This document shows, one piece after another, positions 4,493 through 48,466 of a DNA stretch of 64,000 bases. The notes below the pieces were generated by a model. That model was not told where the DNA came from, made no database searches, and worked only from the letters and a program-made list of their open reading frames with translations. A program made the position numbers and the translations under genes. Location: the IMG/VR virus record IMGVR_UViG_3300005289_000052, positions 62,001 to 126,000 of that record; one strand, given 5' to 3'. The number at the start of each line of letters is the position of its first letter. The stretch's first letter is position 1.

Positions 4493-4550
4493 AAAAAAAA
4501 AGAGTCTAACGCGGACTCCAGAGTACAGAGACCCGAAGGTCTCTGTACTC
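4493..4550. terminator. Bidirectional intrinsic terminator
   Basis: Perfect hairpin GAGTACAGAGACC-CGAA-GGTCTCTGTACTC (4521-4550) with an A-run to its left, between convergent genes. Confidence 0.8.
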
Positions 4551-9373: not shown

Positions 9374-9445
9374 GTTTACTACCTTAATATGTCTTAGCTC
9401 TTCTTAGAGCAGGGATTAGAAGGGGACCCGAAGGTCCCCATGGAT

Positions 9446-20804: not shown

Positions 20805-20824
20805 GGGGCTCCTTCGGGAGCCCC
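20805..20824 (+). terminator. Hairpin between nrdA and nrdB (no U-tract)
   Basis: GGGGCTCC-TTCG-GGAGCCCC. Confidence 0.5.
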
Positions 20825-31044: not shown

Positions 31045-32094
31045 TTATTCGTCGTCGTGACCGAGAGAGTTCTCGCGTTTGCCGCCTTTGGAAACATCGC
31101 AAGAAACGCTTTCGCCGTAGTAGCCGTTGGAAGAACCCATCCAGCGAACCACGACCATACCTTTCAAACCACCGAAGCGGTAAAAGGTCCAAGTCTCGGA
31201 ACCGTAGTAATCTTTCGGCAGTTCCACACCATCATCAGTGTTCGGAGAGTGTGAGGCTTGTTCTGCAATGATCAGAGGACGTCCAATCAAATCCATGAGG
31301 TCGCCCTCAATGTCTTCGATGAAGACCGACTCACAGCAATCCTGGTGATGCTGGAACATTGCGTTGGTGCCGTCGGACATTACGAACAACAGTCGGTCGA
31401 AGGTGATAGACTTGAGGTCTGGTTGGAGAACCTTGCCATCTGCCGAAGCCATACGGTCTGGGAAGCAGATCGCTTTTTCGTCAGAGTCGCTAGGGTACAG
31501 AACGATCTGGGTGACCGTGGCACCTTTGAGTAGCTCTTCGATCTTGGTGTACTCAACATCGTTGGCTTTCGCCACCCGGATGCCTTTCCAGTGCTCGGCG
31601 CTCTTCTCTTCCTCTTCTTCCTCTACCAGCTCTCCTTCCAATGCCTGCTCAACAACCGCTGGCACTTGAGGAGCTTCGTTAATCACTGGCTTTGGCTCAC
31701 CGCCGTTGTCAACGATGAAGCGAACAGCATGACGGAACACAGCCAACTTGCGACGCACTTCGTCAGGGATCGCCAGCAGGTCGCATGGAGTAATCACACC
31801 GTACTTGGCCAGGATGCGTTCGAGTGCAGCTTCCATCTCGATATCCCAACGGCTGGCCATAACCAGAATGATAACTTCGAAGGGTGTCGACAGGCCGAAA
31901 GCTTCTGCCACTGTGGGTTCACAACGGCACTCAACCCGGTAGGCGTTTTCGTCTTGGATAATCGCCATACCTTCATGGCGCATTTCCTTGATGCCTTTGC
32001 GTGCCAGTACACCCAGCAACTCAGAAGCAATTTCTTCACCAACCTTTTGGGTCAGTTCGTGGTCACGCATTCTTGCAATCAACTGCCGGTCCAT
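31045..32094 (-). CDS. Hypothetical protein with C-terminal conserved phage QDCCE/SNGYY domain
   Basis: HQDCCESVFIEDIEGDL...TWTFY...RWMGSSNGYYGESV. Confidence 0.7.
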   Translation of the reverse strand: MDRQLIARMRDHELTQKVGEEIASELLGVLARKGIKEMRHEGMAIIQDENAYRVECRCEPTVAEAFGLSTPFEVIILVMASRWDIEMEAALERILAKYGVITPCDLLAIPDEVRRKLAVFRHAVRFIVDNGGEPKPVINEAPQVPAVVEQALEGELVEEEEEEKSAEHWKGIRVAKANDVEYTKIEELLKGATVTQIVLYPSDSDEKAICFPDRMASADGKVLQPDLKSITFDRLLFVMSDGTNAMFQHHQDCCESVFIEDIEGDLMDLIGRPLIIAEQASHSPNTDDGVELPKDYYGSETWTFYRFGGLKGMVVVRWMGSSNGYYGESVSCDVSKGGKRENSLGHDDE

Positions 32095-32120
32095 CTGAGG
32101 ACTCCTAATAAAGGCATAGC

Positions 32121-32139
32121 CGGGCTCCCGAAGGAGCCC
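32121..32139 (-). terminator. Hairpin terminator after ATP-grasp operon
   Basis: GGGCTCC-CGAA-GGAGCCC. Confidence 0.6.
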
Positions 32140-32146
32140 AAGCTAC

Positions 32147-33466
32147 TTAAACGATGATGTGAGGGATGAAGCGTTCGTTCTTCCACGACAGAGTCGGGGA
32201 TTCGAACTCGCGGATACACAGGGTAGCCGCAGTCGAGTCGAGCATGTCATCACGGTCTTCCACGGCGTCAGGCACCATGAACATACCGATGATGAAGTTG
32301 TTGCGCCCTTCGACTTGACCCGGTGGACAGTACGCCTGATACACACAGTCATCGGTGTACGGACCTTCGGATTCGTGAACCAGTTCGTTCTCGTCACCGA
32401 ACACCTTGACGTTGGACGACATGCGACCAACCTTAGGCTTCTGCACGTACGACATACCCGAGTTGATGAACGGCTCAGCCGAGACGTAGGTAGCCAAGGT
32501 AGGAACATCGTCCCACTGGCAACCGTAGCCTGCTGGATCGCTTTCACGGAGGTAAGTGATGTACGCCCAGATGCCTTTGTTCGAGGCAAACCAACGCCAC
32601 GCAGGTTCGAGGAACGTTACGTTGTTGGCCCAGTACTGCCACTCTTTGTAGCCTTGCGGGAAGTTTTCAACCATCTCTTCCCACGGCGACAGAGCAAACA
32701 CCACGTCCAGACGCCGATCACCGATCAACCATGGTTTCTCACGGCAAGCGTGGTCGTAGTCGATGTCGGAGAAGTCAGCGAACAGGGTGGTATTGTTCTG
32801 ACCCAGGATCTGAGCCAGCGTTTCCGAAGTTGCCATGTCTTCGAAACTGTCCTTCTCGAACAGCACGCCGACGTAACCCGGAACCTTGCCCATTTCTTCG
32901 AGTTCGTGGATCAGCGTGTGCCAGAACATGTTGAGCTGGTCTTCCTCACCACCGGTGAACTGTTTACACAGCTCGGTTTGGAGGTTGACCGATTCGAACA
33001 ACATGGTCGGGGTATCGCCGTTGAACTCGTAGATACCTTTGACGGTTTCAGTCGCAGGATCAAACGCCGCATCGAAACGACCGTAGAGCGACTGGCGCGC
33101 CGAGGTGTGCGTACGGAAGGTGTGCTTCGCGTAGTCGATGAAGTACGGGTGTTTACGCAGGAAGTCGCAGCCCATGAACTCCATGATGGTGCTCTGGCTT
33201 TCATTGAACAGACGACCTACGGCGTCAACCAGTTGAGCGTAAGCACGCTCGAACGTGGTTTCCAGTGGAGCACACGACTCTTGACGGATCGTGTAAAACG
33301 GCAGCGCGGCCTGGTTGTCGAGGAAGTAACGGAAATAATCAGTTACATCTTCTTTGAACGTGGCATCGGCGATTTCGCCTTCACGATAAAAACCTTGGGA
33401 CCACGGCAGCTCTTCAACCATGATTTTGTTCAGGTTGAAGTTGATAGGTTTCAGGATGCACTTCAT
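32147..33466 (-). CDS. Glutathionylspermidine synthase-like ATP-grasp ligase (YgiC/YjfC type)
   Basis: SLYGRFD, YEFNGDTPTMLFES, FLEPAW...SNK, KPKVGRMSSNV; no CHAP amidase domain. Confidence 0.85.
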   Translation of the reverse strand: MKCILKPINFNLNKIMVEELPWSQGFYREGEIADATFKEDVTDYFRYFLDNQAALPFYTIRQESCAPLETTFERAYAQLVDAVGRLFNESQSTIMEFMGCDFLRKHPYFIDYAKHTFRTHTSARQSLYGRFDAAFDPATETVKGIYEFNGDTPTMLFESVNLQTELCKQFTGGEEDQLNMFWHTLIHELEEMGKVPGYVGVLFEKDSFEDMATSETLAQILGQNNTTLFADFSDIDYDHACREKPWLIGDRRLDVVFALSPWEEMVENFPQGYKEWQYWANNVTFLEPAWRWFASNKGIWAYITYLRESDPAGYGCQWDDVPTLATYVSAEPFINSGMSYVQKPKVGRMSSNVKVFGDENELVHESEGPYTDDCVYQAYCPPGQVEGRNNFIIGMFMVPDAVEDRDDMLDSTAATLCIREFESPTLSWKNERFIPHIIV

Positions 33467-33468
33467 GT

Positions 33469-34074
33469 TTAGCTACTCGCCGATCCGTGAGAAGACGCAC
33501 GTGCACTGCTCCCCGACATGACACCGGTGGAGCGAGAGGACATGACGGTCGAAGACATCTTCGACTGGAAGTTAGGAGACGAACGAACCGAGGAACGAGC
33601 CTGGTTCATCATCATGGTGCTGTTTGCCGAAGTGGCAGTGTTCATGCGACGACGACGTTCGTCTTCGGCGTACGTACTGCGACCAACCGGCTGGTATTGC
33701 TTCGAGTAGTTGTTCATACCACCCATGCTGTTCATGGCCGAAGCCAACATGTAACCGGCAGCCATACCACCGAGCAGTGGCCAGACCGTGTCGGAGTTTT
33801 GACCGTCAGCGGTTTCCTTCACGATGTGGACCTGCTTTTCACCCTTTTCGTTGTAGGTGAAGTACACGTCTTTTACAGCGGGGTCTTTCGATTGGAGTTC
33901 AGCGAGGGTTTTCTTACGATCTTCCTCGTCGGACGCCAGAGTTTGACGGACCTGCTTTTGCGCTTCGTCTTCAACAAAGGCACGCTCTTCGTCAGCAGAA
34001 GGTTGTGCTGGTTCGCAACCGACCAAAGCGGTGGCGGCAGCAATTGCCAACAATGAGAGTTTAGTTTTATCCAT
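33469..34074 (-). CDS. Lipoprotein, DUF1190/YgiB-like, with Ser-rich tail
   Basis: Lipobox ALVG-C after signal peptide; WPLLGGMAAGYML; C-terminal SSRSTG...SSHGSASS; 2 nt from GSP-like gene. Confidence 0.75.
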   Translation of the reverse strand: MDKTKLSLLAIAAATALVGCEPAQPSADEERAFVEDEAQKQVRQTLASDEEDRKKTLAELQSKDPAVKDVYFTYNEKGEKQVHIVKETADGQNSDTVWPLLGGMAAGYMLASAMNSMGGMNNYSKQYQPVGRSTYAEDERRRRMNTATSANSTMMMNQARSSVRSSPNFQSKMSSTVMSSRSTGVMSGSSARASSHGSASS

Positions 34075-34090: not shown

Positions 34091-34127
34091 AAAATAAAAG
34101 GGAAAGGGGAGAGCCGAAGCCCTCCCC
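34091..34127 (-). terminator. Intrinsic terminator
   Basis: GGGGAGAGC-CGAA-GCCCTCCCC with T-rich tail on minus strand. Confidence 0.65.
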
Positions 34128-34135
34128 ACGCAGAA

Positions 34136-34381
34136 TCAAGTAGCCATCGGAGAGATTGAGTCAATGACGATTACTGCTTGTCCTGGCTCTTTCAACTTTT
34201 GGCGATAGACTCGAAGAAAAGCTTCGGCGTCAAATGGTGGTTGGTTCGCAAACCGTTGGCTCATACGTTCCAGTACCTCAGCAGTGTGCTGTGGCGTGGT
34301 GTCGTAGAAACCAGCAGTGATATCCACCTGCACTTGATTCTTGCGCCCAGTATTTTGAAACAGATCGATGACCTTCGACAT
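34136..34381 (-). CDS. Hypothetical protein
   Basis: 81 aa, TGATG coupling to thyA. Confidence 0.55.
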   Translation of the reverse strand: MSKVIDLFQNTGRKNQVQVDITAGFYDTTPQHTAEVLERMSQRFANQPPFDAEAFLRVYRQKLKEPGQAVIVIDSISPMAT

Positions 34382-36069
34382 CAGACGGCTGCCTTGGGGA
34401 ACTCGATTTTTCCAGAATGCTTATACCCAACGATCTCGATGTCTTCCATTTTGAAATCGAAGATGTTCTTGATGTTGGGGTTCAAACGGATGGTTGGACG
34501 GGAATCTTCCACAGGCTCCTGATCCAACCACTTGAGTACCGCAGGCCACTGGTTCTCGTAGATGTGGCAATCGCCGCCGGTCCAAGTGAAGGTATCGGCG
34601 GCGTGACCAGTTACTTGAGCAACCATGTGAGTCAGCATTGCGTATTGTACAACGTTGAACGGATGACCCAGCGGTACATCGTTACTGCGCATGTACAGAT
34701 GCGACGACAGCTTGCGGGTCGGGACCTTGGCATCGTCCAAGAACTGGAAGACTTCAGGATGACGCTGGAACTCGTGTTCGTGACGACGATCATCGTGCAT
34801 CACGGCCATGTTCAACACTTCTTCGGACATATGCTCGAAGCCAGCAGGCTTGTACGTACCCAGCCACTCCAGTCGCTCACGCACCGACATCGGCTTGGAG
34901 AAGAACTGACAGAAGGTGTGGCAAGGACGCAGCGCCATCTCTTCCAGCTCAGCCACGTTCCATGCGGTCAGGATGATACCCCGATCGTCAGGATTGTTGA
35001 TGAGTTGGTCGATGATCTTCTTCACCTGGTCGATCTCGCGACTCACGACGTAGGTTTTACCCTTACCATGAGTTTCGATGTAATCGCTGGAGATCTCACC
35101 GTGGAAGTCATACCCATGTTCAGACAACACGCGGTATTCTTCCTCGCTCACCAAACGAGTGTCATTCCAGTAGCGCCACTGATGCTGGTAGATCTTCGGC
35201 AGTTCGCCAGCAGTGATGGTCTGCGTAGCGATGTCCTTGGACTCCGCGAAACGGTAGAACAGTTCGAACAGCGGAGAGTCTTCAGGCAGCGTTTTCACGA
35301 TGGCTTCAAACAACGGGAGCAGCCACTTGTTGTTGGTGGAGCGCTCGTCGGCCAACAACTCACGGATAGCCGCCGCTGACTTCCAGCGAGTATCTTCGAC
35401 AAAGACCATGACGAAGTCGCGCAACAGGTTTGCCTGAGCAAACGCGTTGAGCAATTCACCCCAGGTGAGGTGACGCCATTCGGCAGTCGTCGCCTTGACC
35501 CACGAATCCCAAATACCGATGTTGTGCTTCTTGAGGAAGCGAACGTTGGTATCGCCCGACAGCATCCAGAGCAACTCGCCCTTGATGCCGAAGTTCCAGT
35601 TGAACTTGGTGGAGATCGACGGCAGTTGACCCATGGAGATGTCCACGGTGTAAGACTGCGAGTTGATCGCACGGGAACGCACCCCGGTACGAGTCTCACT
35701 GTCCACACCCTGCTCCATGATCTTGAGCACCAGCTCGCGGACGTGGTAATCCACGTTGTACGAACTAGGGTCTGGCAAACCAATGATGGCTTTCCCTGGA
35801 GACCACTGGCGCTTCATGCGCTGTTCCAAACGCCACAGCTTGGCCGAAACCTCAGGACGGAACTCGAAAGGAATCCGAGCGTTGTCCAGAGCGCAGATAG
35901 CGTCACCTACCTGCATCGGGTCGTTCAAGTCAGCTAAACACGCTTGGTAGTTACCCGACTCGGCCAGTAACGACATACGCTGGGAGAAGGAATAGAAGTT
36001 CAGCGAGCTGTTGTCGTGATCTTCAATCAGCTTGCGCGCAGTGCGCATACGTTCGTTCAAGTCTTTCAT
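34381..36069 (-). CDS. thyA: Thymidylate synthase (with extensions/insertions)
   Basis: GELLWMLSG, IWDSW, MALRPCH (catalytic Cys), MRSNDVPLGHPFN, GDCHIYENQ. Confidence 0.93.
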   Translation of the reverse strand: MKDLNERMRTARKLIEDHDNSSLNFYSFSQRMSLLAESGNYQACLADLNDPMQVGDAICALDNARIPFEFRPEVSAKLWRLEQRMKRQWSPGKAIIGLPDPSSYNVDYHVRELVLKIMEQGVDSETRTGVRSRAINSQSYTVDISMGQLPSISTKFNWNFGIKGELLWMLSGDTNVRFLKKHNIGIWDSWVKATTAEWRHLTWGELLNAFAQANLLRDFVMVFVEDTRWKSAAAIRELLADERSTNNKWLLPLFEAIVKTLPEDSPLFELFYRFAESKDIATQTITAGELPKIYQHQWRYWNDTRLVSEEEYRVLSEHGYDFHGEISSDYIETHGKGKTYVVSREIDQVKKIIDQLINNPDDRGIILTAWNVAELEEMALRPCHTFCQFFSKPMSVRERLEWLGTYKPAGFEHMSEEVLNMAVMHDDRRHEHEFQRHPEVFQFLDDAKVPTRKLSSHLYMRSNDVPLGHPFNVVQYAMLTHMVAQVTGHAADTFTWTGGDCHIYENQWPAVLKWLDQEPVEDSRPTIRLNPNIKNIFDFKMEDIEIVGYKHSGKIEFPKAAV

Positions 36070-37631: not shown

Positions 37632-39344
37632 TTAGTCGCTGGACGACGAACCGCCATCGGAGCTACCACCGGAGTCATTACCACCGCCGTAACCGCTGTC
37701 ATCGCGAGCATCACGATGTGGCGCTGGGTCGTAACGGAATGGAGCTTCGTCAACGTGAGCGAACTCAGGACGCTGGCCACGAGCGTAGACTTTGTCGCCC
37801 GCAACGTTGTCACCGGAACCCGAGTGGGACTGCTGGATGTTGCGCTCGTGTGCAGCTTCGGCTCGAGCTTGCAGTTCCGGGTTCAGTTCGATGGGACGAG
37901 ACAGCCCACGACCGATTTCCGGGTTGTCACCGTAGTTGACGTTCAGACCACCGTCAGCACGACGCTCTACAGATTCTGGCAGGCGGACTTCTTCACCGAA
38001 GGGTTGACCCGTGCGGATCTCTTCGGCAACTTCGTCACCCATACGCCCAGCTTCTTCTTCATCGTCCAGGTCATCCGGCAGATCGCCGTCTTCTTCCTGC
38101 TCGAGTTCCAGACCATTGCCGTCATCGAGCGGTTCTTCGGGCACTGGATCGCCTTTCAGGGCGTCCCAGCCTTCCAGCACCGATGCCTTGATGGCAGCGA
38201 TGGTTTGGTCAGGTGCAGGATCGTGTGGATCGATAGCGATCACCAGAGCCTTCTTGCCTTCCATCGGATGGTCGATGAAACCGTCGAAGAACGCTTGACC
38301 TGCACGTTCAACAACCGCCTCGCCTTCCTGGAGTTTCCAGCTCAACAGATCGAAGTCGCTGGATTCGAGGTAAGCGTTGGCCACTTCGAGCGACAGGACT
38401 TCGGCAGGCAGTTGAGCAATGCGCTCAGCTTCGGCACGGGCGTCAGACGCACGTTGTGCTTCGGCTTCATCGAACTGCGCTTGTTCTTCGGCCTTGGCTT
38501 TGTCGTCAGCGATCAGACGCTTGTAGGCGTCAGCCAGGATGTACGACCAGCGCTCGAGGTTGAACCCCGACGCAGGGTCGGTGATTTCGTCCAGGGTGTA
38601 GAAGCCGCAGGTGATCAGCTCTTCTTCTTTGCAGGTGACTTCGATGTGTGGCGGAATGCCGACCGAATACACCAGACCCAGGTGTTGTTTGCCGACGTCG
38701 TTGGCGTCGTCACGGATGAAGCCTTCGTGACTGAAAGTGGTCGGGCAGTTCTGAATCAGTTCCTGGAAGGTCATGCCGGAGAAGTCCAGCTCTTCGTCCA
38801 TTTCCTCGATCAGGCTGGCGACCATGGCGTCGCGAGCATTGAGGGTCCAGTTCGGGTAGAAGCGCATCGACTGAGCTTCTGGATGACCGGCCGCACCGAT
38901 GGAGTGGTTGCCCGCCAGCTTTTCTTCGCCGACCTTCTTGCTGCGCTGGAAGATGAAGAACTCGATCTGGTTCTTGGCTTCGTTGTGACGATGGATCATC
39001 ACGTACGGGATCGGGTGACGGAACAGCGGACTTTCTTCCAGACGGCGGCGACGAGTCATCACCATGTCCAGCTTGATGCGGTCGAAACGCTCGGACATTA
39101 CGTCCTTGAGTGGATCGGCGGTGTACTCGAGACCTTGTACAGTGAACTCGGCGTCGATGGCGTCACGCCAGTAGCCGATCACCAGGCGGTCTTTCGAGTC
39201 GACTGCTTCATCACCCGGTTGTACGGTGGGAGCAGCGAGGCCAGCTTCGGACGGGTGCACGTTACCCAGCTCAGCTACAGCTTCGCCAACAGGCAGAGCC
39301 TGGTCTTGAGCCAATTCTTCCGACGGTTGTTGTTGCAGATCCAT
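37632..39344 (-). CDS. Nudix-like (COG4112-type) hydrolase fused to long acidic/low-complexity tail
   Basis: LEE.P.FRHPIPYV, QR...GEEKLAGNHSIGAAGH, LIEEMDEEL, VGKQHLGLV; C-terminal acidic region ending GGSSDGGSSSSD. Confidence 0.7.
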   Translation of the reverse strand: MDLQQQPSEELAQDQALPVGEAVAELGNVHPSEAGLAAPTVQPGDEAVDSKDRLVIGYWRDAIDAEFTVQGLEYTADPLKDVMSERFDRIKLDMVMTRRRRLEESPLFRHPIPYVMIHRHNEAKNQIEFFIFQRSKKVGEEKLAGNHSIGAAGHPEAQSMRFYPNWTLNARDAMVASLIEEMDEELDFSGMTFQELIQNCPTTFSHEGFIRDDANDVGKQHLGLVYSVGIPPHIEVTCKEEELITCGFYTLDEITDPASGFNLERWSYILADAYKRLIADDKAKAEEQAQFDEAEAQRASDARAEAERIAQLPAEVLSLEVANAYLESSDFDLLSWKLQEGEAVVERAGQAFFDGFIDHPMEGKKALVIAIDPHDPAPDQTIAAIKASVLEGWDALKGDPVPEEPLDDGNGLELEQEEDGDLPDDLDDEEEAGRMGDEVAEEIRTGQPFGEEVRLPESVERRADGGLNVNYGDNPEIGRGLSRPIELNPELQARAEAAHERNIQQSHSGSGDNVAGDKVYARGQRPEFAHVDEAPFRYDPAPHRDARDDSGYGGGNDSGGSSDGGSSSSD

Positions 39345-39923: not shown

Positions 39924-39943
39924 AGGCAGGCCGAAGCCTGCCT
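39924..39943 (-). terminator. Hairpin terminator after Nampt-like gene
   Basis: AGGCAGGC-CGAA-GCCTGCCT. Confidence 0.65.
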
Positions 39944-39955
39944 CTATGCTGTTAC

Positions 39956-41914
39956 TTAGTAGGTGGCACCGCCGAGACGCTCACGGATTTCACCGAGAGT
40001 GGTACGGTTGGTGAAGTGACTGTTCTTGAACACGGAACGCAGTTCGCCCGACGAAGTAGCCAGGGTATCGAACGACATGTCCTGTTCTTGAGACAGTACG
40101 TAGTCATCTTCTACCAGGTCTACACGCAGGAAGCCTTTCGCAGACTTCTTGGCAGTTTCGCCTTCGGTGGCTGGCGCTTTGTACAGGTCGATGAGAGTAT
40201 CTTCGATCTGGATCGCAGTGCCTTTGATAGCCTGGCCGAAAGTGTCGCGAGTGATGTACTGGTAGGTGTAGCTACCGATACCGAGTACCACGTTGCCCGA
40301 AGCGAAGGCTTTCTTCGCCAGACGACGCATGATCTCTTCGGTGCGTTGAACAGTGATGCTGTCACCGTAGATCAGACCGATGTGTTCGTCCAGCAGACGG
40401 TAGCCTTCCATGGTGGTGGTGCCACCGAAGGTTTCCCACAGGCATTCCACAGCGCCTTTCTCTTCTGGGGTCAGCACGTGCTCCACGATGTGGTAGCCAC
40501 ACTGGTAACGACCGGTCAGATCGTATTCCAGCTCGATCTCCAGCGACTTGAGGAAGCCGTAGATCATTGGCTTCACTGGGTCGTGGACTTCGGTCGGCAG
40601 ACGCTCAGGCGACAGATGACGAGTAGCAGCAGTCATGCCCTGGAAGGAGTCGACCACAGTACGACCAGCACGCTCGAGGATCGCCGCATCCAGTTCAGCC
40701 CACGAACGGTTACGATTGCGATTGATCGAATCGGTAGCACGCCACAGCTTGTGTTCGCGATCACGGAAGTAGATGTGCTTGCGACGACCGTCAGCAGGAC
40801 CACGACGGTACATCATTTGCTCAGCTTCTTCTTGGGTGAAGATCTCAGCACCACAGATGATCTCAACCGGATCACCCGAGTCAGGACGGATCACGACTTT
40901 GGCCAGACCGAGGCTGTCTTTCGGACGCGACAGGATCACGTCTTTCAGTTCAGGAACGATCTTGGTGACGACGCCCCAGAAGTCAAACGAGTCCGACACC
41001 AGAGCCACAGCACCGTTCGGGTAGACCTCGGTGATCAGACGCTTGAAGAAGCGCTTCTCGGCTTCCAGGCGCATGCGCTTGTAGCCTTCCTCGTCGACCT
41101 TCTGGTTTTTCTCTTGAAGCTGTTCGAGTTCGAAGTGCAGCTCGGAGAGGATGTTGGCCGTAGCAACGGCGTGTTCGGTAGCCGGAATCGAGCAGGCCAC
41201 GAACTCCTTCTCTACGTTCGCGCCGTAGTAGTCTTCGGCGTAGTCGATCGCAGGGATGGTGTCGGTACCGCAGAAGCTCAGCAGGTGACCGAAGGAACCA
41301 CGCACGTCTTCCAGACCGATGCCACGGAACGAGAAGTCGTGACCCTGGACGTCAACGAACTCTTTCGGAGTACCGGTGACTTGAGCCCAGTGTTTCAGGA
41401 CACGACGGTATTCGAAAGCGATGGTCGAACAGGTGACGATTTTCCAGATCAACGCCGACATCGAGGTTTCGAGGTAGTTCGTGAACCAGTAGAAGTCAGG
41501 GTGCGTGTTGTAGATGGTGTACAACGGCACGTTCATGTTGACACGTGCACCTTCCGGCAGCGCCAGTACTTCGATCGGCAGGTAGCCCAGGTCGTGCAGA
41601 CGCTCGAAACCATCAACTGGAACCTTGCCTTCGCCGAGGTAGTAGTCCATGCGGCGCTTGTAGCGCTTGATGACTTCATCTTTCGGCTTGGAGAAGAAGC
41701 TGCGCTGCCACAGCTCGTTCAGTTCTTGCAGGATACCTTGCAGACCAGCCCAGACCACCTTGTGATCCCAGAACTGCGACTTCGATACGGAACGCTCGAA
41801 CAGGCGATCAGCACGCGCCGTCAGGTTCCCGTAGGTGAAGTTGGAGCCTTTCGGGAACATTGGGCGGTGGCCGACTTTGTAACCGTCACAAACGTTGGGG
41901 GCAAACAGGTTCAT
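39956..41914 (-). CDS. nadV: Nicotinamide phosphoribosyltransferase-like protein (Nampt/Namat)
   Basis: DGYKVGH, HDFSFRG, GTDTIPA, IPATEH, VSDSFD, IRPDSGDP, GLIYGDSIT, GIGSYTYQ, KKSAKG. Confidence 0.92.
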   Translation of the reverse strand: MNLFAPNVCDGYKVGHRPMFPKGSNFTYGNLTARADRLFERSVSKSQFWDHKVVWAGLQGILQELNELWQRSFFSKPKDEVIKRYKRRMDYYLGEGKVPVDGFERLHDLGYLPIEVLALPEGARVNMNVPLYTIYNTHPDFYWFTNYLETSMSALIWKIVTCSTIAFEYRRVLKHWAQVTGTPKEFVDVQGHDFSFRGIGLEDVRGSFGHLLSFCGTDTIPAIDYAEDYYGANVEKEFVACSIPATEHAVATANILSELHFELEQLQEKNQKVDEEGYKRMRLEAEKRFFKRLITEVYPNGAVALVSDSFDFWGVVTKIVPELKDVILSRPKDSLGLAKVVIRPDSGDPVEIICGAEIFTQEEAEQMMYRRGPADGRRKHIYFRDREHKLWRATDSINRNRNRSWAELDAAILERAGRTVVDSFQGMTAATRHLSPERLPTEVHDPVKPMIYGFLKSLEIELEYDLTGRYQCGYHIVEHVLTPEEKGAVECLWETFGGTTTMEGYRLLDEHIGLIYGDSITVQRTEEIMRRLAKKAFASGNVVLGIGSYTYQYITRDTFGQAIKGTAIQIEDTLIDLYKAPATEGETAKKSAKGFLRVDLVEDDYVLSQEQDMSFDTLATSSGELRSVFKNSHFTNRTTLGEIRERLGGATY

Positions 41915-42822
41915 GCCAGAAGTCCTTGTACAGGGTGCCAGTAGATTTTGTCGTCATTGACTTCGTCAGGACGCTTGTTGTACGACGCGTTCGGGTGCCA
42001 CGAGTTGGTGGTGCGAATCTGGTCGTAGTGTTTGGTCAGTAGAGCGTAGCCTTTGGTGAACAGACCGTGAGTGACGAACAGCTCGAGAGAGCAGTAGTCA
42101 TTATCGCCGCTCACACGCATGTAGTCCGCCTCGAAAGGCTGGAGCTTCTCACGCAGAGCTTTGGCCAGCTCGATGAAGGTGAAGCCACCGTCGCAGATGT
42201 CGTCAACAACCAACCAGGTCAAACGAGGGGTTGGCTCAAACGGGATGTCGACACTGGTGCCAACGATCTTGCCGGTTTCGACGTCACGGTGTTTGGAACC
42301 GTAAGCGATACGAGTAACACCAACCAGGCGGGCCAGTTCTTCAACCTTCTTCACCGCCCCAGCGTCAGGGGCTACCAGTACAACGCGTTCCCAGGCGTGA
42401 CGACCGAGCTTAGCAACGATCTGCGGTAGGGTGATGTGGGTCAGGCGATCCAACAGAGCAGCACCGACGTCACTGTGAATGTCCAGGACCGTCACGGTGT
42501 TGTAGCGCTGGAGGTTGATGATGTCGCAGAACGGCTTGATGGTCAGCGACTCACCTGGACGTGGCACGCGGTCTTGGCGAGCGTACGGCAGGTAAGGCAT
42601 GTACAGGTGGATCTCGAGGGCTGGGTTCAGCCGACGGATCGCATCAGTGACCATGACGAGGTCCATGATGTCCACTGCGTTCTTGAGGTGAGCGGTCAGG
42701 TTGACAGCTTTCCAGCTCGCTACAGCGGGGTCGACGTACGGATGCACTTCACCGCCCGGCAACACTTTCGAGTTAGCGGGAAACGAGATGTTAACGTCCC
42801 CACGATTGCTAATCAAAATCAT
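41911..42822 (-). CDS. prs: Ribose-phosphate pyrophosphokinase-like protein (Adps candidate)
   Basis: GGEVHP, MPYLPYARQDR, LDIHS, APDAGA, VVDDICDGGFTF, VTHGLF; 4-nt overlap with Nampt-like gene. Confidence 0.88.
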   Translation of the reverse strand: MILISNRGDVNISFPANSKVLPGGEVHPYVDPAVASWKAVNLTAHLKNAVDIMDLVMVTDAIRRLNPALEIHLYMPYLPYARQDRVPRPGESLTIKPFCDIINLQRYNTVTVLDIHSDVGAALLDRLTHITLPQIVAKLGRHAWERVVLVAPDAGAVKKVEELARLVGVTRIAYGSKHRDVETGKIVGTSVDIPFEPTPRLTWLVVDDICDGGFTFIELAKALREKLQPFEADYMRVSGDNDYCSLELFVTHGLFTKGYALLTKHYDQIRTTNSWHPNASYNKRPDEVNDDKIYWHPVQGLLA

Positions 42823-48418: not shown

Positions 48419-48466
48419 GATGTTCCATTCCAGATAGATGCGGGTCTCCGAAGAGACCCTAGAGAA

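What the first reader, a model, noticed from the sequence alone, without database searches (positions are those of the whole stretch)
32147..34074. Self-contained lipoprotein + GSP-synthase-like ATP-grasp operon: candidate phage peptide-tagging system
The two genes are 2 nt apart, bracketed by hairpins (34091-34127 and 32121-32139) and strongly codon-optimised. They mirror bacterial ygiB-ygiC / yjfM-yjfC pairs, whose ligases hydrolyse ATP but reportedly do not make glutathionylspermidine, so the real substrate is unknown. The lipoprotein ends in a Ser/Gly-rich tail, and the Nudix fusion 3.5 kb away ends in a similar Gly/Ser/Asp tail. These tails may be acceptors for ligation, modifying the infected-cell envelope (stress protection or superinfection exclusion).
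Basis: partly seen in the sequence, partly recalled or inferred. Interest (0 to 1): 0.65.

Follow-up and report, generated by a model that had tools for sequence, protein, structure and literature searches.

The report
Phage lipoprotein plus peptide-polyamine ligase pair
A jumbo phage carries its own copy of the bacterial YgiB/YgiC-type gene pair, and the lipoprotein's strictly conserved C-terminal tail is the best candidate yet for the unknown natural substrate of this peptide-spermidine ligase family.

Summary
On the minus strand, a 201-aa lipoprotein (33469-34074) lies 2 nt upstream of a 439-aa synthetase-only GSP_synth ATP-grasp ligase (32147-33466), with a stem-loop on each side. The genome is a complete 243.7-kb phage.

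The ligase is closest to E. coli YjfC/YgiC, now named peptide-spermidine ligases. It keeps the ATP-grasp catalytic residues and the acidic polyamine pair, but not the glutathione-side residues.

The lipoprotein is only a weak DUF1190 match, but it has the same plan: lipobox, acidic N-domain, Gly/Met-rich hydrophobic segment, and a basic Ser/Gly tail.

The new point is the tail. A partner gene with a conserved extreme C-terminus (usually ...[Y/H/F]xxGG-COOH) sits upstream of the ligase in 15 of 16 phage lineages sampled and at least 19 of 23 bacterial loci. Also, 87 of 91 enterobacterial YgiB clusters end in GG, nearly all -RSMGG. In this clade, the last 20 codons show 12 synonymous changes against 1 replacement.

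Best reading: the ligase amidates the partner's C-terminal carboxylate with a host polyamine. This is inferred; the complex prediction gives only weak support, and membrane topology is unresolved.

The "Nudix" tail idea fails: there is no Nudix match, and that tail is not conserved in orthologues.

The parts
33469..34074 (-). Lipoprotein gene (201 aa, P0001), a distant DUF1190/YgiB-like partner
   Evidence: ORF and translation. phrog_13808 E 3.5e-39. Pfam DUF1190 only E 0.044, 14.5 bits against a cut-off of 22. 30 relatives in metagenomic jumbo-phage contigs.
34015..34074 (-). Signal peptide with lipobox (L-V-G-C, Cys20)
   Evidence: Read from the translation. Cys20 is invariant and Gly19 nearly invariant across 22 relatives.
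33718..33789 (-). Gly/Met/Ala-rich hydrophobic segment (aa 96-119); possible but unproven membrane span
   Evidence: Kyte-Doolittle 19-aa mean is 1.16 here and 0.7-1.7 in homologues. The N-domain has net charge -8 and the tail +8. AF2 does not model the segment as one long helix.
33472..33717 (-). Basic Ser/Gly-rich C-terminal tail (aa 120-201) with an RRRR cluster
   Evidence: Composition and charge. Alignments A1 and A3.
33472..33516 (-). Conserved extreme C-terminal motif (last 15 aa, ...SARASSHGSASS-COOH), the proposed ligation site
   Evidence: Nearly invariant in about 20 relatives down to 73% overall identity. The last 20 codons show 12 synonymous and 1 non-synonymous change against L037. 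Related motifs end YgiB, YjfM and the phage partners. AF2 models this stretch as disordered.
32147..33466 (-). ATP-grasp acid-amine ligase (439 aa, P0002), synthetase-only GSP_synth family of the YgiC/YjfC type
   Evidence: Pfam PF03738 E 9.5e-39. phrog_6215 E 2.8e-103. Best solved relatives are YjfC 7uk6 (2.3e-14) and YgiC 7uk8 (2.3e-11). Catalytic residues are conserved.
34096..34127 (-). Intrinsic terminator of the upstream 81-aa gene, 21 nt before the lipoprotein start
   Evidence: Terminator scan and fold.
32115..32146 (-). Stable UUCG stem-loop directly after the ligase stop codon
   Evidence: -22 kcal/mol, z -3.65. One of a recurrent class of hairpins in this genome.

Best explanation
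The locus is a phage-borne, minimal version of the bacterial two-gene module DUF1190-type lipoprotein plus YgiC/YjfC-type ATP-grasp ligase.

Shown:
- The ligase is a synthetase-only member of the glutathionylspermidine-synthetase family with an intact ATP-grasp catalytic set and the acidic polyamine-binding pair.
- The lipoprotein shares the architecture and the conserved C-terminal motif of YgiB/YjfM-type partners.
- The two genes are translationally coupled and co-inherited in many unrelated phages and bacteria.

Inferred mechanism:
1. In the cytoplasm, the ligase phosphorylates a C-terminal carboxylate with ATP.
2. It then amidates that carboxylate with a host polyamine (spermidine or a relative), as GspS does with the glycine carboxylate of glutathione.
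3. The physiological carboxylate is the small-residue C-terminus of its own partner lipoprotein.
4. The modified tail is either held in the cytoplasm by the central hydrophobic segment, or capped before export.

The product would be an envelope lipoprotein whose C-terminus carries a cationic polyamine in place of a carboxylate. More speculatively, it conditions the infected cell's membrane or envelope, in line with the membrane-stress links of the bacterial systems.
For: Family and catalytic residues:
- Pfam GSP_synth gives 134 bits. The nearest solved structures are YjfC and YgiC.
- GspS residues R316, D318, E330, N332, K498, K533, R538 and R598 align to R130, D132, E147, N149, K297, K343, R348 and R419. 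All are invariant in 79 homologues.
- Spermidine-binding E391/E392 (role from PMC6272389) align to E209/D210.
- YgiC/YjfC have peptide-spermidine ligase activity with an unknown physiological substrate (RefSeq product names).

Partner and tail:
- A partner gene lies upstream in 15 of 16 sampled phage lineages and in at least 19 of 23 bacterial loci from Campylobacter to Alcaligenaceae.
- Tail ends include ...SRSMGG (YgiB), ...ARGHWGG (YjfM), ...SGYSSGG, ...FSSGG and ...SHGSASS.
- 87 of 91 enterobacterial YgiB clusters end in GG, nearly all as -RSMGG.
- The tail is the most constrained part of the protein: 12 synonymous to 1 replacement change, against 18:19 in codons 120-180.
- Charge asymmetry is -7 to -11 for the N-domain and +8 to +15 for the tail in the nine partners scored.

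Polyamine link:
- An AdoMetDC-spermidine synthase fusion sits next to the pair in L011.
- Homospermidine synthase sits next to it in phage Motura (PMC9992855).
- Bacterial operons of this kind carry polyamine genes (PMC11237479).

Complex prediction (ligase + ATP + Mg + tail 120-201): weak support.
- Score 0.51; best of 3 controls 0.00.
- The mark was reached by 58 of 80 solved complexes and 2 of 110 mismatched pairs. At 0.60 or under it was reached by only 7 of those 80 solved complexes and by both mismatches that passed.
- The runs agree in at least 7% of contacts, and the partner's pLDDT is at least 26.
Against: - No direct evidence of a modified tail exists.
- The ligase is cytoplasmic and the partner carries an export signal, so the model needs either a cytoplasmic tail or capping before export.
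- The hydrophobic segment is only weakly hydrophobic (KD 1.16; my hand sum on the Hessa scale is about +4 to +6 kcal/mol).
- AF2 folds residues 27-186 as one unit without a long membrane helix. E. coli YgiB is predicted in the literature to be an outer-membrane lipoprotein.
- This clade ends in -SS rather than -GG.
- Profile comparison did not detect homology to YgiB/YjfM beyond the signal peptide, and Pfam DUF1190 is below its cut-off.
- The complex prediction is only weak: one of three runs scored 0.00, and no interface was given.
- One phage (DSS3_VP1) has the ligase without an obvious partner.
- I could not read Pederick et al. 2023, so I do not know their peptide specificity.
Confidence: 0.45

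Rival explanations
1. The ligase makes a soluble small-molecule conjugate (short peptide or amino acid plus polyamine). This would buffer, store or re-route host spermidine or putrescine during infection. The lipoprotein is a functionally linked but not covalently modified partner, for example a sensor, a membrane anchor or regulator for the ligase, or a periplasmic binder of the product.
For: In vitro, YgiC/YjfC accept free peptides. The ligase is cytoplasmic and the partner is exported. AF2 models the partner as one folded unit. Phage polyamine enzymes are common auxiliary genes (PMC9992855). The complex prediction is only weak.
Against: This does not explain why the extreme C-terminus of the partner is its most conserved element from E. 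coli to phages. It also does not explain why that terminus mimics the glycine carboxylate end of glutathione.
Confidence: 0.3
2. The enzyme is a true glutathionylspermidine synthase that gives the infected cell a redox-protective thiol.
For: Database annotation in all phage relatives. Pfam family membership.
Against: The residues aligned to GspS S335, S337 and C338 are T, T and M, and D610 aligns to R, as in YgiC. YgiC lacks this activity. The NCBIfam equivalog for GspSA scores 25.7 bits against a cut-off of 882. There is no amidase domain. The obligate lipoprotein partner would be unexplained.
Confidence: 0.05
3. The ligase serves polyamine-containing DNA hypermodification, as with putrescinyl-thymine in PhiW-14, given the adjacent thymidylate-synthase-like gene.
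For: PhiW-14 carries the pair. The PhiW-14 paper singles out gp91 as the only polyamine-related protein and notes restriction-resistant Lu11 DNA (PMC5977210). A 562-aa TS homologue lies 300 bp upstream here.
Against: The same module occurs in many bacteria and in T4-like Aeromonas phages, always with the lipoprotein. Nothing in the chemistry of thymidine hypermodification needs a carboxylate-amine ligase or a lipoprotein. I did not test for the pathway's kinase or pyrophosphorylase genes here.
Confidence: 0.05

Closest known systems
E. coli YgiB-YgiC and YjfM-YjfC (DUF1190 protein plus peptide-spermidine ligase)
   Same: Same gene order and near-zero spacing (5 and 2 nt). The ligases are the best solved relatives. 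The ligase is synthetase-only with YgiC-like substrate-side residues. The partner has a lipobox, a Gly/Met-rich hydrophobic segment, a basic S/G tail and a small-residue C-terminus.
   Different: The ligase is about 50 aa longer and only about 25% identical. The phage partner lacks the Cys-rich N-domain and instead has a helix plus 3-strand unit with a weak PepSY/YpmB likeness (prob 0.51). It falls below the Pfam DUF1190 threshold. This clade ends -SS, not -GG. There are no PspA, DUF350 or DUF2491 neighbours.
Pseudomonas phages Lu11 (gp278-gp277) and HRDY3, and the phiPMW, NoPa, UAVern, PhiW-14 and VPMCC14 pairs
   Same: Homologous lipoprotein (30-46% identity) directly or nearly directly upstream of a homologous ligase (34-56% identity).
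   Different: The published genome papers call only the ligase and describe its function as unclear; those checked do not mention the lipoprotein. Some have 1-2 small membrane ORFs between the two genes. Most end -GG.
Campylobacter jejuni Cj0371-type UPF0323 lipoprotein plus downstream GSP_synth gene
   Same: In Campylobacter and Helicobacter loci, a UPF0323-type lipoprotein with an S/G tail ending -FGS or -GG lies 2-8 nt upstream of a related ligase.
   Different: Cj0371 has been studied for chemotaxis and virulence and is reported to be a membrane protein that pulls down CheV (PMC6104132). No link to the ligase has been drawn.
E. coli GspSA (bifunctional glutathionylspermidine synthetase/amidase)
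   Same: ATP-grasp fold family, conserved catalytic residues and acyl-phosphate mechanism.
   Different: No CHAP amidase domain. The glutathione-side residues are replaced. The NCBIfam equivalog score is far below its cut-off.
RimK and tubulin-tyrosine ligase (ATP-grasp enzymes acting on protein C-termini; from my own knowledge)
   Same: Precedent for an ATP-grasp ligase activating the C-terminal carboxylate of a specific protein.
   Different: They add amino acids, not polyamines. They belong to different ATP-grasp subfamilies. No relationship was tested here.

Membership tests
GSP_synth (PF03738), YgiC/YjfC-type peptide-polyamine ligases | Profile match above the curated threshold over the synthetase domain | tested here: met
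   134.1 bits against a cut-off of 29.3, residues 63-438. phrog_6215 E 2.8e-103. YjfC and YgiC are the top PDB hits.
GSP_synth (PF03738), YgiC/YjfC-type peptide-polyamine ligases | ATP-grasp catalytic and Mg/ATP residues (GspS R316, D318, E330, N332, K498, K533, R538, R598; roles recalled from Pai et al. 2006) | tested here: met
   All are conserved in P0002 and invariant in 79 homologues.
GSP_synth (PF03738), YgiC/YjfC-type peptide-polyamine ligases | Acidic polyamine-binding pair (GspS E391/E392) | tested here: met
   E209/D210, nearly invariant in A2. D387 and D389 are not conserved.
GSP_synth (PF03738), YgiC/YjfC-type peptide-polyamine ligases | Peptide-polyamine ligase activity | not testable with these tools
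   Needs an enzyme assay. The activity is known only for E. coli YgiC/YjfC.
True glutathionylspermidine synthetase/amidase (GspSA) | N-terminal CHAP amidase domain, glutathione-side residues, and the equivalog score | tested here: not met
   No amidase domain. S335/S337/C338 align to T/T/M. NF007801 scores 25.7 bits against 882.
DUF1190 (PF06693; YgiB/YjfM) | Profile match above the curated threshold | tested here: not met
   14.5 bits against 22, E 0.044, covering only the hydrophobic segment and tail. 3 of 13 phage members reach E <= 0.1. hhalign against YgiB and YjfM aligns only the signal peptide.
DUF1190 (PF06693; YgiB/YjfM) | Cys-rich ('metal-chelating') N-terminal domain | tested here: not met
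   There is no Cys after the lipobox Cys20. The Aeromonas, Motura, RSL1, OC and LAh_6 phage partners do have it.
DUF1190 (PF06693; YgiB/YjfM) | Architecture: lipobox, acidic domain, Gly/Met-rich hydrophobic segment, basic S/G tail with a conserved small-residue C-terminus | tested here: met
DUF1190 (PF06693; YgiB/YjfM) | Gene immediately upstream of, and co-oriented with, a GSP_synth ligase | tested here: met
   2-nt gap here. 5 and 2 nt in E. coli. -4 to +50 nt in bacterial loci.
Bitopic inner-membrane lipoprotein (N-out, C-in) | A hydrophobic span able to insert, with a positive-inside charge bias | tested here: inconclusive
   The charge bias is strong (-8/+8). The segment is weakly hydrophobic, and AF2 does not build a membrane helix.
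Anti-phage defence or superinfection-exclusion systems | Match to a known defence protein model | tested here: not met
   No PADLOC hit for either protein.

The most novel reading that the evidence does not exclude
Protein C-terminal polyamination would be a dedicated, previously undescribed post-translational modification. YgiC/YjfC-type ligases, including this phage's, cap the conserved -GG/-SS carboxyl terminus of their cognate DUF1190-type lipoprotein with spermidine or a related polyamine.

The phage would use this to install a cationic, amine-tipped lipoprotein in the infected envelope. That tip could grip anionic lipids, or even serve as an amine nucleophile for covalent attachment to peptidoglycan, as the C-terminal lysine of Braun's lipoprotein does.

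This would also name the long-sought physiological substrate of E. coli YgiC and YjfC.
Probability: 0.3. Interest if true: 0.85.

Novelty: new variant of a known kind. Interest (0 to 1): 0.62.

Why it matters
YgiC and YjfC are conserved E. coli enzymes. Their in vitro activity, peptide-spermidine ligation, was found only in 2023, and their natural substrate is still unknown. Their partners YgiB, YjfM and Cj0371 are tied to TolC-related growth defects, PspA-type membrane-stress operons, biofilm and virulence, without a mechanism.

The phage copies strip the system down to two genes. They show what is kept across phages and bacteria from Helicobacter to E. coli: the ligase's catalytic core and the partner's extreme C-terminus.

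That turns an open question into a one-week experiment: co-express the two genes and weigh the lipoprotein. If the tail is the substrate, this would be a new kind of protein modification. It would also be a new way for phages to remodel the host envelope with host polyamines. If it is not, the pair is still a widespread, probably well-expressed auxiliary module in jumbo and T4-like phages whose lipoprotein half has gone unannotated.

Tried and rejected
- Megablast of the locus against GenBank phages found no match. Only protein-level relatives exist.
- hhalign of the phage lipoprotein profile against single YgiB and YjfM sequences aligned only the lipobox region. Homology to DUF1190 therefore rests on a sub-threshold Pfam hit plus architecture, tail motif and synteny.
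- The lipoprotein AF2 model found nothing significant with Foldseek against PDB or in the ESM Atlas shape search. The best hit was YpmB/PepSY at prob 0.51 over 49 residues.
- PDB sequence search with the lipoprotein found nothing.
- PADLOC gave no hits.
- Spermidine synthase and AdoMetDC families are absent from this phage's own genome, so any polyamine must come from the host.
- The 570-aa 'Nudix fusion' as a second target is rejected. It has no NUDIX match, its tail is acidic and lacks the R..H/Y..GG motif, and the tail is missing from orthologues in L037 and L038.
- The codon comparison with L038 was misaligned by an indel and was discarded. Only the L037 comparison is used.
- Hairpin bracketing as a sign of a special autonomous cassette is rejected. 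The same UUCG hairpins punctuate the whole genome, and no promoter was found.
- Pederick et al. 2023 and Dhamdhere & Zgurskaya 2010 are not held in the library. I cite them only through papers that cite them or from memory, marked as such.
- The large profile search (search of protein representatives) and the reads tools were not used. The family scans and word searches answered the question, and the record is a metagenomic virus.
Full report
WHAT IS THERE

The window lies in a complete 243,669-bp virus record with direct terminal repeats. On the minus strand, an ORF begins at the ATG at 34074 and encodes a 201-aa protein with a classical lipoprotein signal, ending in the lipobox L-V-G-C with Cys20. 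Its TAA stop lies at 33469-33471. Two nucleotides later, the ATG at 33466 opens a 439-aa ORF that ends at 32147.

FLANKING STRUCTURES AND EXPRESSION

- Upstream, 34127-34106(-) is a GC-rich stem with a UUCG loop followed by a T-tract. The scan calls it a terminator, and it closes the preceding 81-aa gene.
- Downstream, 32139-32122(-) is a stable UUCG hairpin (-22 kcal/mol, z -3.65) with a poor U-tract.
- These hairpins are not special to this locus. Eighteen perfect UUCG hairpins with stems of 6 bp or more occur in the genome, mostly on the coding strand.
- No sigma-70-like promoter was found for the pair. "Self-contained operon" is therefore plausible but not shown.
- Codon bias is strong for the ligase (Nc 38.0, rank 15 of 184 genes of 150 aa or more) and moderate for the lipoprotein (Nc 44.0, rank 52). 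The median is 47.6. This suggests good expression.

THE LIGASE

- The protein matches Pfam GSP_synth at 134 bits over residues 63-438 and phrog_6215 at E 2.8e-103.
- It has no amidase domain and fails the NCBIfam equivalog for bifunctional GspSA (25.7 bits against 882).
- Its nearest solved relatives are E. coli YjfC (7uk6, E 2.3e-14) and YgiC (7uk8, E 2.3e-11), well ahead of trypanothione synthetase.
- In an alignment with E. coli GspS, YgiC and eleven phage and bacterial homologues, GspS residues R316, D318, E330, N332, K498, K533, R538 and R598 correspond to R130, D132, E147, N149, K297, K343, R348 and R419. I recall these from Pai et al. 2006 as the ATP/Mg and acyl-phosphate set. All are invariant in a 79-sequence alignment.
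- GspS E391/E392, which are part of the spermidine site (PMC6272389), align to E209/D210, which are nearly invariant.
- Positions aligned to GspS S335, S337, C338 and D610 are T, T, M and R. This is the YgiC pattern rather than the GspS pattern.
- YgiC and YjfC do not make glutathionylspermidine (Sui et al. 2012). They do have peptide-spermidine ligase activity with an unknown physiological substrate (Pederick et al. 2023). Both are reported in PMC11762307. RefSeq now names both "peptide--spermidine ligase".
The amine is known; the physiological carboxylate is not.

THE LIPOPROTEIN

- The protein matches phrog_13808 (unknown function) at E 3.5e-39. It matches Pfam DUF1190, the YgiB/YjfM family, only at E 0.044, which is below threshold and covers only residues 99-185.
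- hhalign of the phage profile against single YgiB or YjfM sequences aligns only the lipobox. Three of thirteen phage members reach DUF1190 at E <= 0.1. Membership of the Pfam family is not established.
- The architecture, however, is the same. In the window protein, seven phage homologues and E. coli YgiB, a lipobox is followed by an acidic domain (net -7 to -11). Next comes a Gly/Met/Ala-rich hydrophobic segment (Kyte-Doolittle 0.7-1.7), then a basic Ser/Gly/Ala/Thr-rich tail (net +8 to +15). YjfM shows the same plan by eye but dropped out of that script.
- The bacterial Cys-rich N-domain is replaced here by a long helix plus a three-stranded sheet (AF2 model: pLDDT 77.5, pTM 0.60). Its only, weak, structural echo is the PepSY-like YpmB.

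THE TAIL IS THE CONSERVED ELEMENT

This is the main new result.

- E. coli YgiB ends ...SRSMGG and YjfM ends ...ARGHWGG.
- PhiW-14 gp89, phiPMW gp104, NoPa and UAVern end ...S-A-R-S-x-G-Y-S-x-G-G. VPMCC14 ends ...SRGG. Lu11 and HRDY3 end ...R-S-x-x-H-... with small residues.
- The window clade ends ...SSARA[A/S]SHGSASS. This is almost unchanged in about 20 relatives whose overall identity falls to 73%.
- Against the relative in L037, the last 20 codons differ at 13 codons, but only one changes the residue (12 synonymous, 1 replacement). The ratios are 18:19 in codons 120-180 and 26:13 in the N-domain. The low-complexity-looking tail is therefore under the strongest purifying selection in the protein.
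- Among 91 enterobacterial YgiB cluster representatives, 87 end in GG, nearly all as -RSMGG.
- A scan of one genome per species with the ligase alignment returned 23 bacterial loci: Azomonas, Azotobacter, Corticimicrobacter, Algicola, Paenalcaligenes, Alcaligenes, a Flavobacteriaceae MAG, Campylobacter, Helicobacter and others.
- In at least 19 of them, the ORF just upstream (gap -4 to +50 nt) is a 180-240-aa lipoprotein-like protein. These end ...SGYSSGG...SYGGGA...SYSSGS...SYSRGG...TSFGS...SGVGG or ...SGFGG.
- More distant phage ligases show the same partner. This holds for T4-like Aeromonas phages phiAS4 and 44RR2.8t, Motura, phiRSL1, Ochrobactrum phage OC, LAh_6 and an Acinetobacter contig. 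Here the partner has the bacterial-type Cys-rich domain and tails ending ...FGSSGG...FSAGG...ASAGG...SVAG...FSSGS and ...FSFGG.
- Of 16 phage lineages inspected, only DSS3_VP1 lacks an obvious partner.
- AF2 models the last 15 residues as disordered, as expected for a tail that enters an active site.

POLYAMINE CONTEXT

- In L011 (an Achromobacter assembly with phage-like neighbours), a fused AdoMet decarboxylase-spermidine synthase lies divergently next to the pair.
- In Motura, homospermidine synthase is adjacent (noted in PMC9992855).
- Ravi et al. 2024 describe bacterial PspA operons. These combine this ATP-grasp ligase with DUF350, the "metal-chelating lipoprotein DUF1190", DUF2491, a K+ channel and further polyamine genes (PMC11237479).
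- LAh_6 and DSS3_VP1 keep the K+ channel, and the Aeromonas T4-like phages keep a Band-7 lipoprotein.
- This phage encodes no spermidine synthase or AdoMetDC, so it must draw on host polyamines.

MECHANISM PROPOSED

GspS phosphorylates the glycine carboxylate of glutathione, and spermidine N1 attacks the acyl phosphate.

By analogy, given peptide-spermidine ligation by YgiC/YjfC, I propose that the ligase activates the C-terminal carboxylate of its own partner and amidates it with a polyamine. The evidence for the enzyme class and for the conserved tail is direct. The tail-as-substrate step is inference.

A complex prediction (ligase with alignment A2, ATP, Mg, and tail residues 120-201 with alignment A1) gave weak support:
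- The score was 0.51 (runs 0.60, 0.00, 0.51), and the best of 3 controls was 0.00.
- The mark was reached by 58 of 80 solved complexes and 2 of 110 mismatched pairs. At 0.60 or under it was reached by only 7 of those 80 solved complexes and by both mismatches that passed.
- The runs agree in at least 7% of contacts, and the partner's pLDDT is at least 26.
- No interface was released.
- The tool states that such a pass is more often wrong than right unless the guess was likely beforehand. Here the prior from comparative data is reasonable, so it adds a little.

THE TOPOLOGY PROBLEM

The ligase has no signal peptide and needs ATP, whereas the partner is exported. There are two ways out.

(a) The hydrophobic segment acts as a stop-transfer, which leaves the basic tail in the cytoplasm. 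The consistent -8/+8 charge asymmetry fits the positive-inside rule. Cj0371 is reported to be a membrane protein that pulls down cytoplasmic CheV (PMC6104132).

(b) The tail is capped before Sec export, helped by translational coupling.

Against (a): the segment is only weakly hydrophobic, AF2 does not build a membrane helix, and YgiB is predicted in the literature to be an outer-membrane lipoprotein. I leave this open, and it is the main reason the overall confidence is below one half.

- The 570-aa protein at 37632-39344 does have the most S/G-rich C-terminus in the genome. But it has no NUDIX match at E <= 1.
- Its tail is acidic and lacks the motif. The orthologues in L037 and L038 (34-37% identical over the body) end quite differently.
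- It is not a credible second substrate.

RIVAL EXPLANATIONS

- A soluble peptide-polyamine product, with the lipoprotein as a non-covalent partner, remains the main rival. It does not explain the conserved terminus.
- True glutathionylspermidine synthesis is unlikely on residue and equivalog grounds.
- A role in polyamine-type DNA hypermodification was suggested for PhiW-14 gp91 in PMC5977210, and the neighbouring TS-like gene prompts the idea here. It does not explain the module's presence in bacteria or its obligate lipoprotein. I did not test for the hypermodification kinase or pyrophosphorylase genes.

NOVELTY

The phage ligase has been annotated for years as "glutathionylspermidine synthase, function unclear". 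The papers I could search do not mention the lipoprotein partner. Nor did I find the observation that partner C-termini are conserved across phages and bacteria. The pair is a new, stripped-down variant of a known bacterial module rather than a new kind of system. Its value lies in making the physiological substrate of YgiC/YjfC directly testable.

LIMITS

- I could not read Pederick et al. 2023 or Dhamdhere & Zgurskaya 2010.
- The counts of loci are not phylogenetically independent.
- The host is unknown. The nearest named relatives are Pseudomonas phages.
- No expression or proteomic data were examined.

Noticed in passing
window 39956-41914(-) and 41911-42822(-): A 652-aa NAPRTase-family protein and a 303-aa PRPP-synthetase-like protein overlap by 4 nt. 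This looks like the phage NAD+ reconstitution pair (Adps plus Namat, 'NARP1'; name from my own knowledge). A NAMPT/NAPRTase-family gene, in some with a PRPP-synthetase-like gene, lies within 1-6 kb of the lipoprotein-ligase pair in phiPMW, NoPa, UAVern and L038, and next to the ligase in DSS3_VP1. From memory, E. coli tolC ygiBC yjfMC mutants show NAD+ depletion (Dhamdhere & Zgurskaya 2010, not readable here), so the repeated neighbourhood may not be an accident.
   Followed up: partly
window 34381-36069(-): This thymidylate-synthase homologue is 562 aa, about twice the usual length. The Pfam match is split into two stretches around a large insertion (roughly residues 180-390). Orthologues of 521-530 aa sit in the same position in related phages. 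Whether it is a TS or a dUMP hydroxymethylase was not determined.
   Followed up: no
window 37632-39344(-): This 570-aa, strongly codon-biased protein (Nc 37.0, rank 9 of 184) matches phrog_8902 of unknown function. It has a Nudix-box-like stretch that no Pfam model recognises. Its long acidic, low-complexity C-terminal extension is absent from orthologues.
   Followed up: partly
whole genome; in the window at 4521-4550, 9422-9439, 20805-20824, 32122-32139, 39924-39943 and 48442-48459: Perfect GC-rich stem-loops with a UUCG tetraloop recur between genes, 18 in 244 kb, and 14 of them are on the minus (main coding) strand. Many lack a U-tract, so they may be RNA-stability or processing elements rather than terminators.
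   Followed up: partly
window 31045-32094(-): The gene directly downstream of the ligase encodes a 349-aa protein with a C-terminal DUF7448 domain (E 2.9e-20; phrog_2650). It is followed by a canonical terminator at 31038-31019. It could belong to the same transcript as the pair.
   Followed up: no
L003 6804-6998, L006 2856-2996, L008 2478-3004: In PhiW-14, phiPMW and NoPa, one or two very small hydrophobic ORFs (46-90 aa, 1-2 predicted membrane helices) sit between the lipoprotein and ligase genes. They may stand in for the DUF350 membrane protein of the bacterial yjf operon. The window's clade has none.
   Followed up: no
P0013: A 91%-identical copy of the lipoprotein is deposited as a protein of 'Streptomyces sp. 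CHB9.2' on a 241,743-bp contig. That size matches this jumbo phage, so the contig is probably a phage in, or contaminating, that assembly rather than a Streptomyces gene.
   Followed up: no
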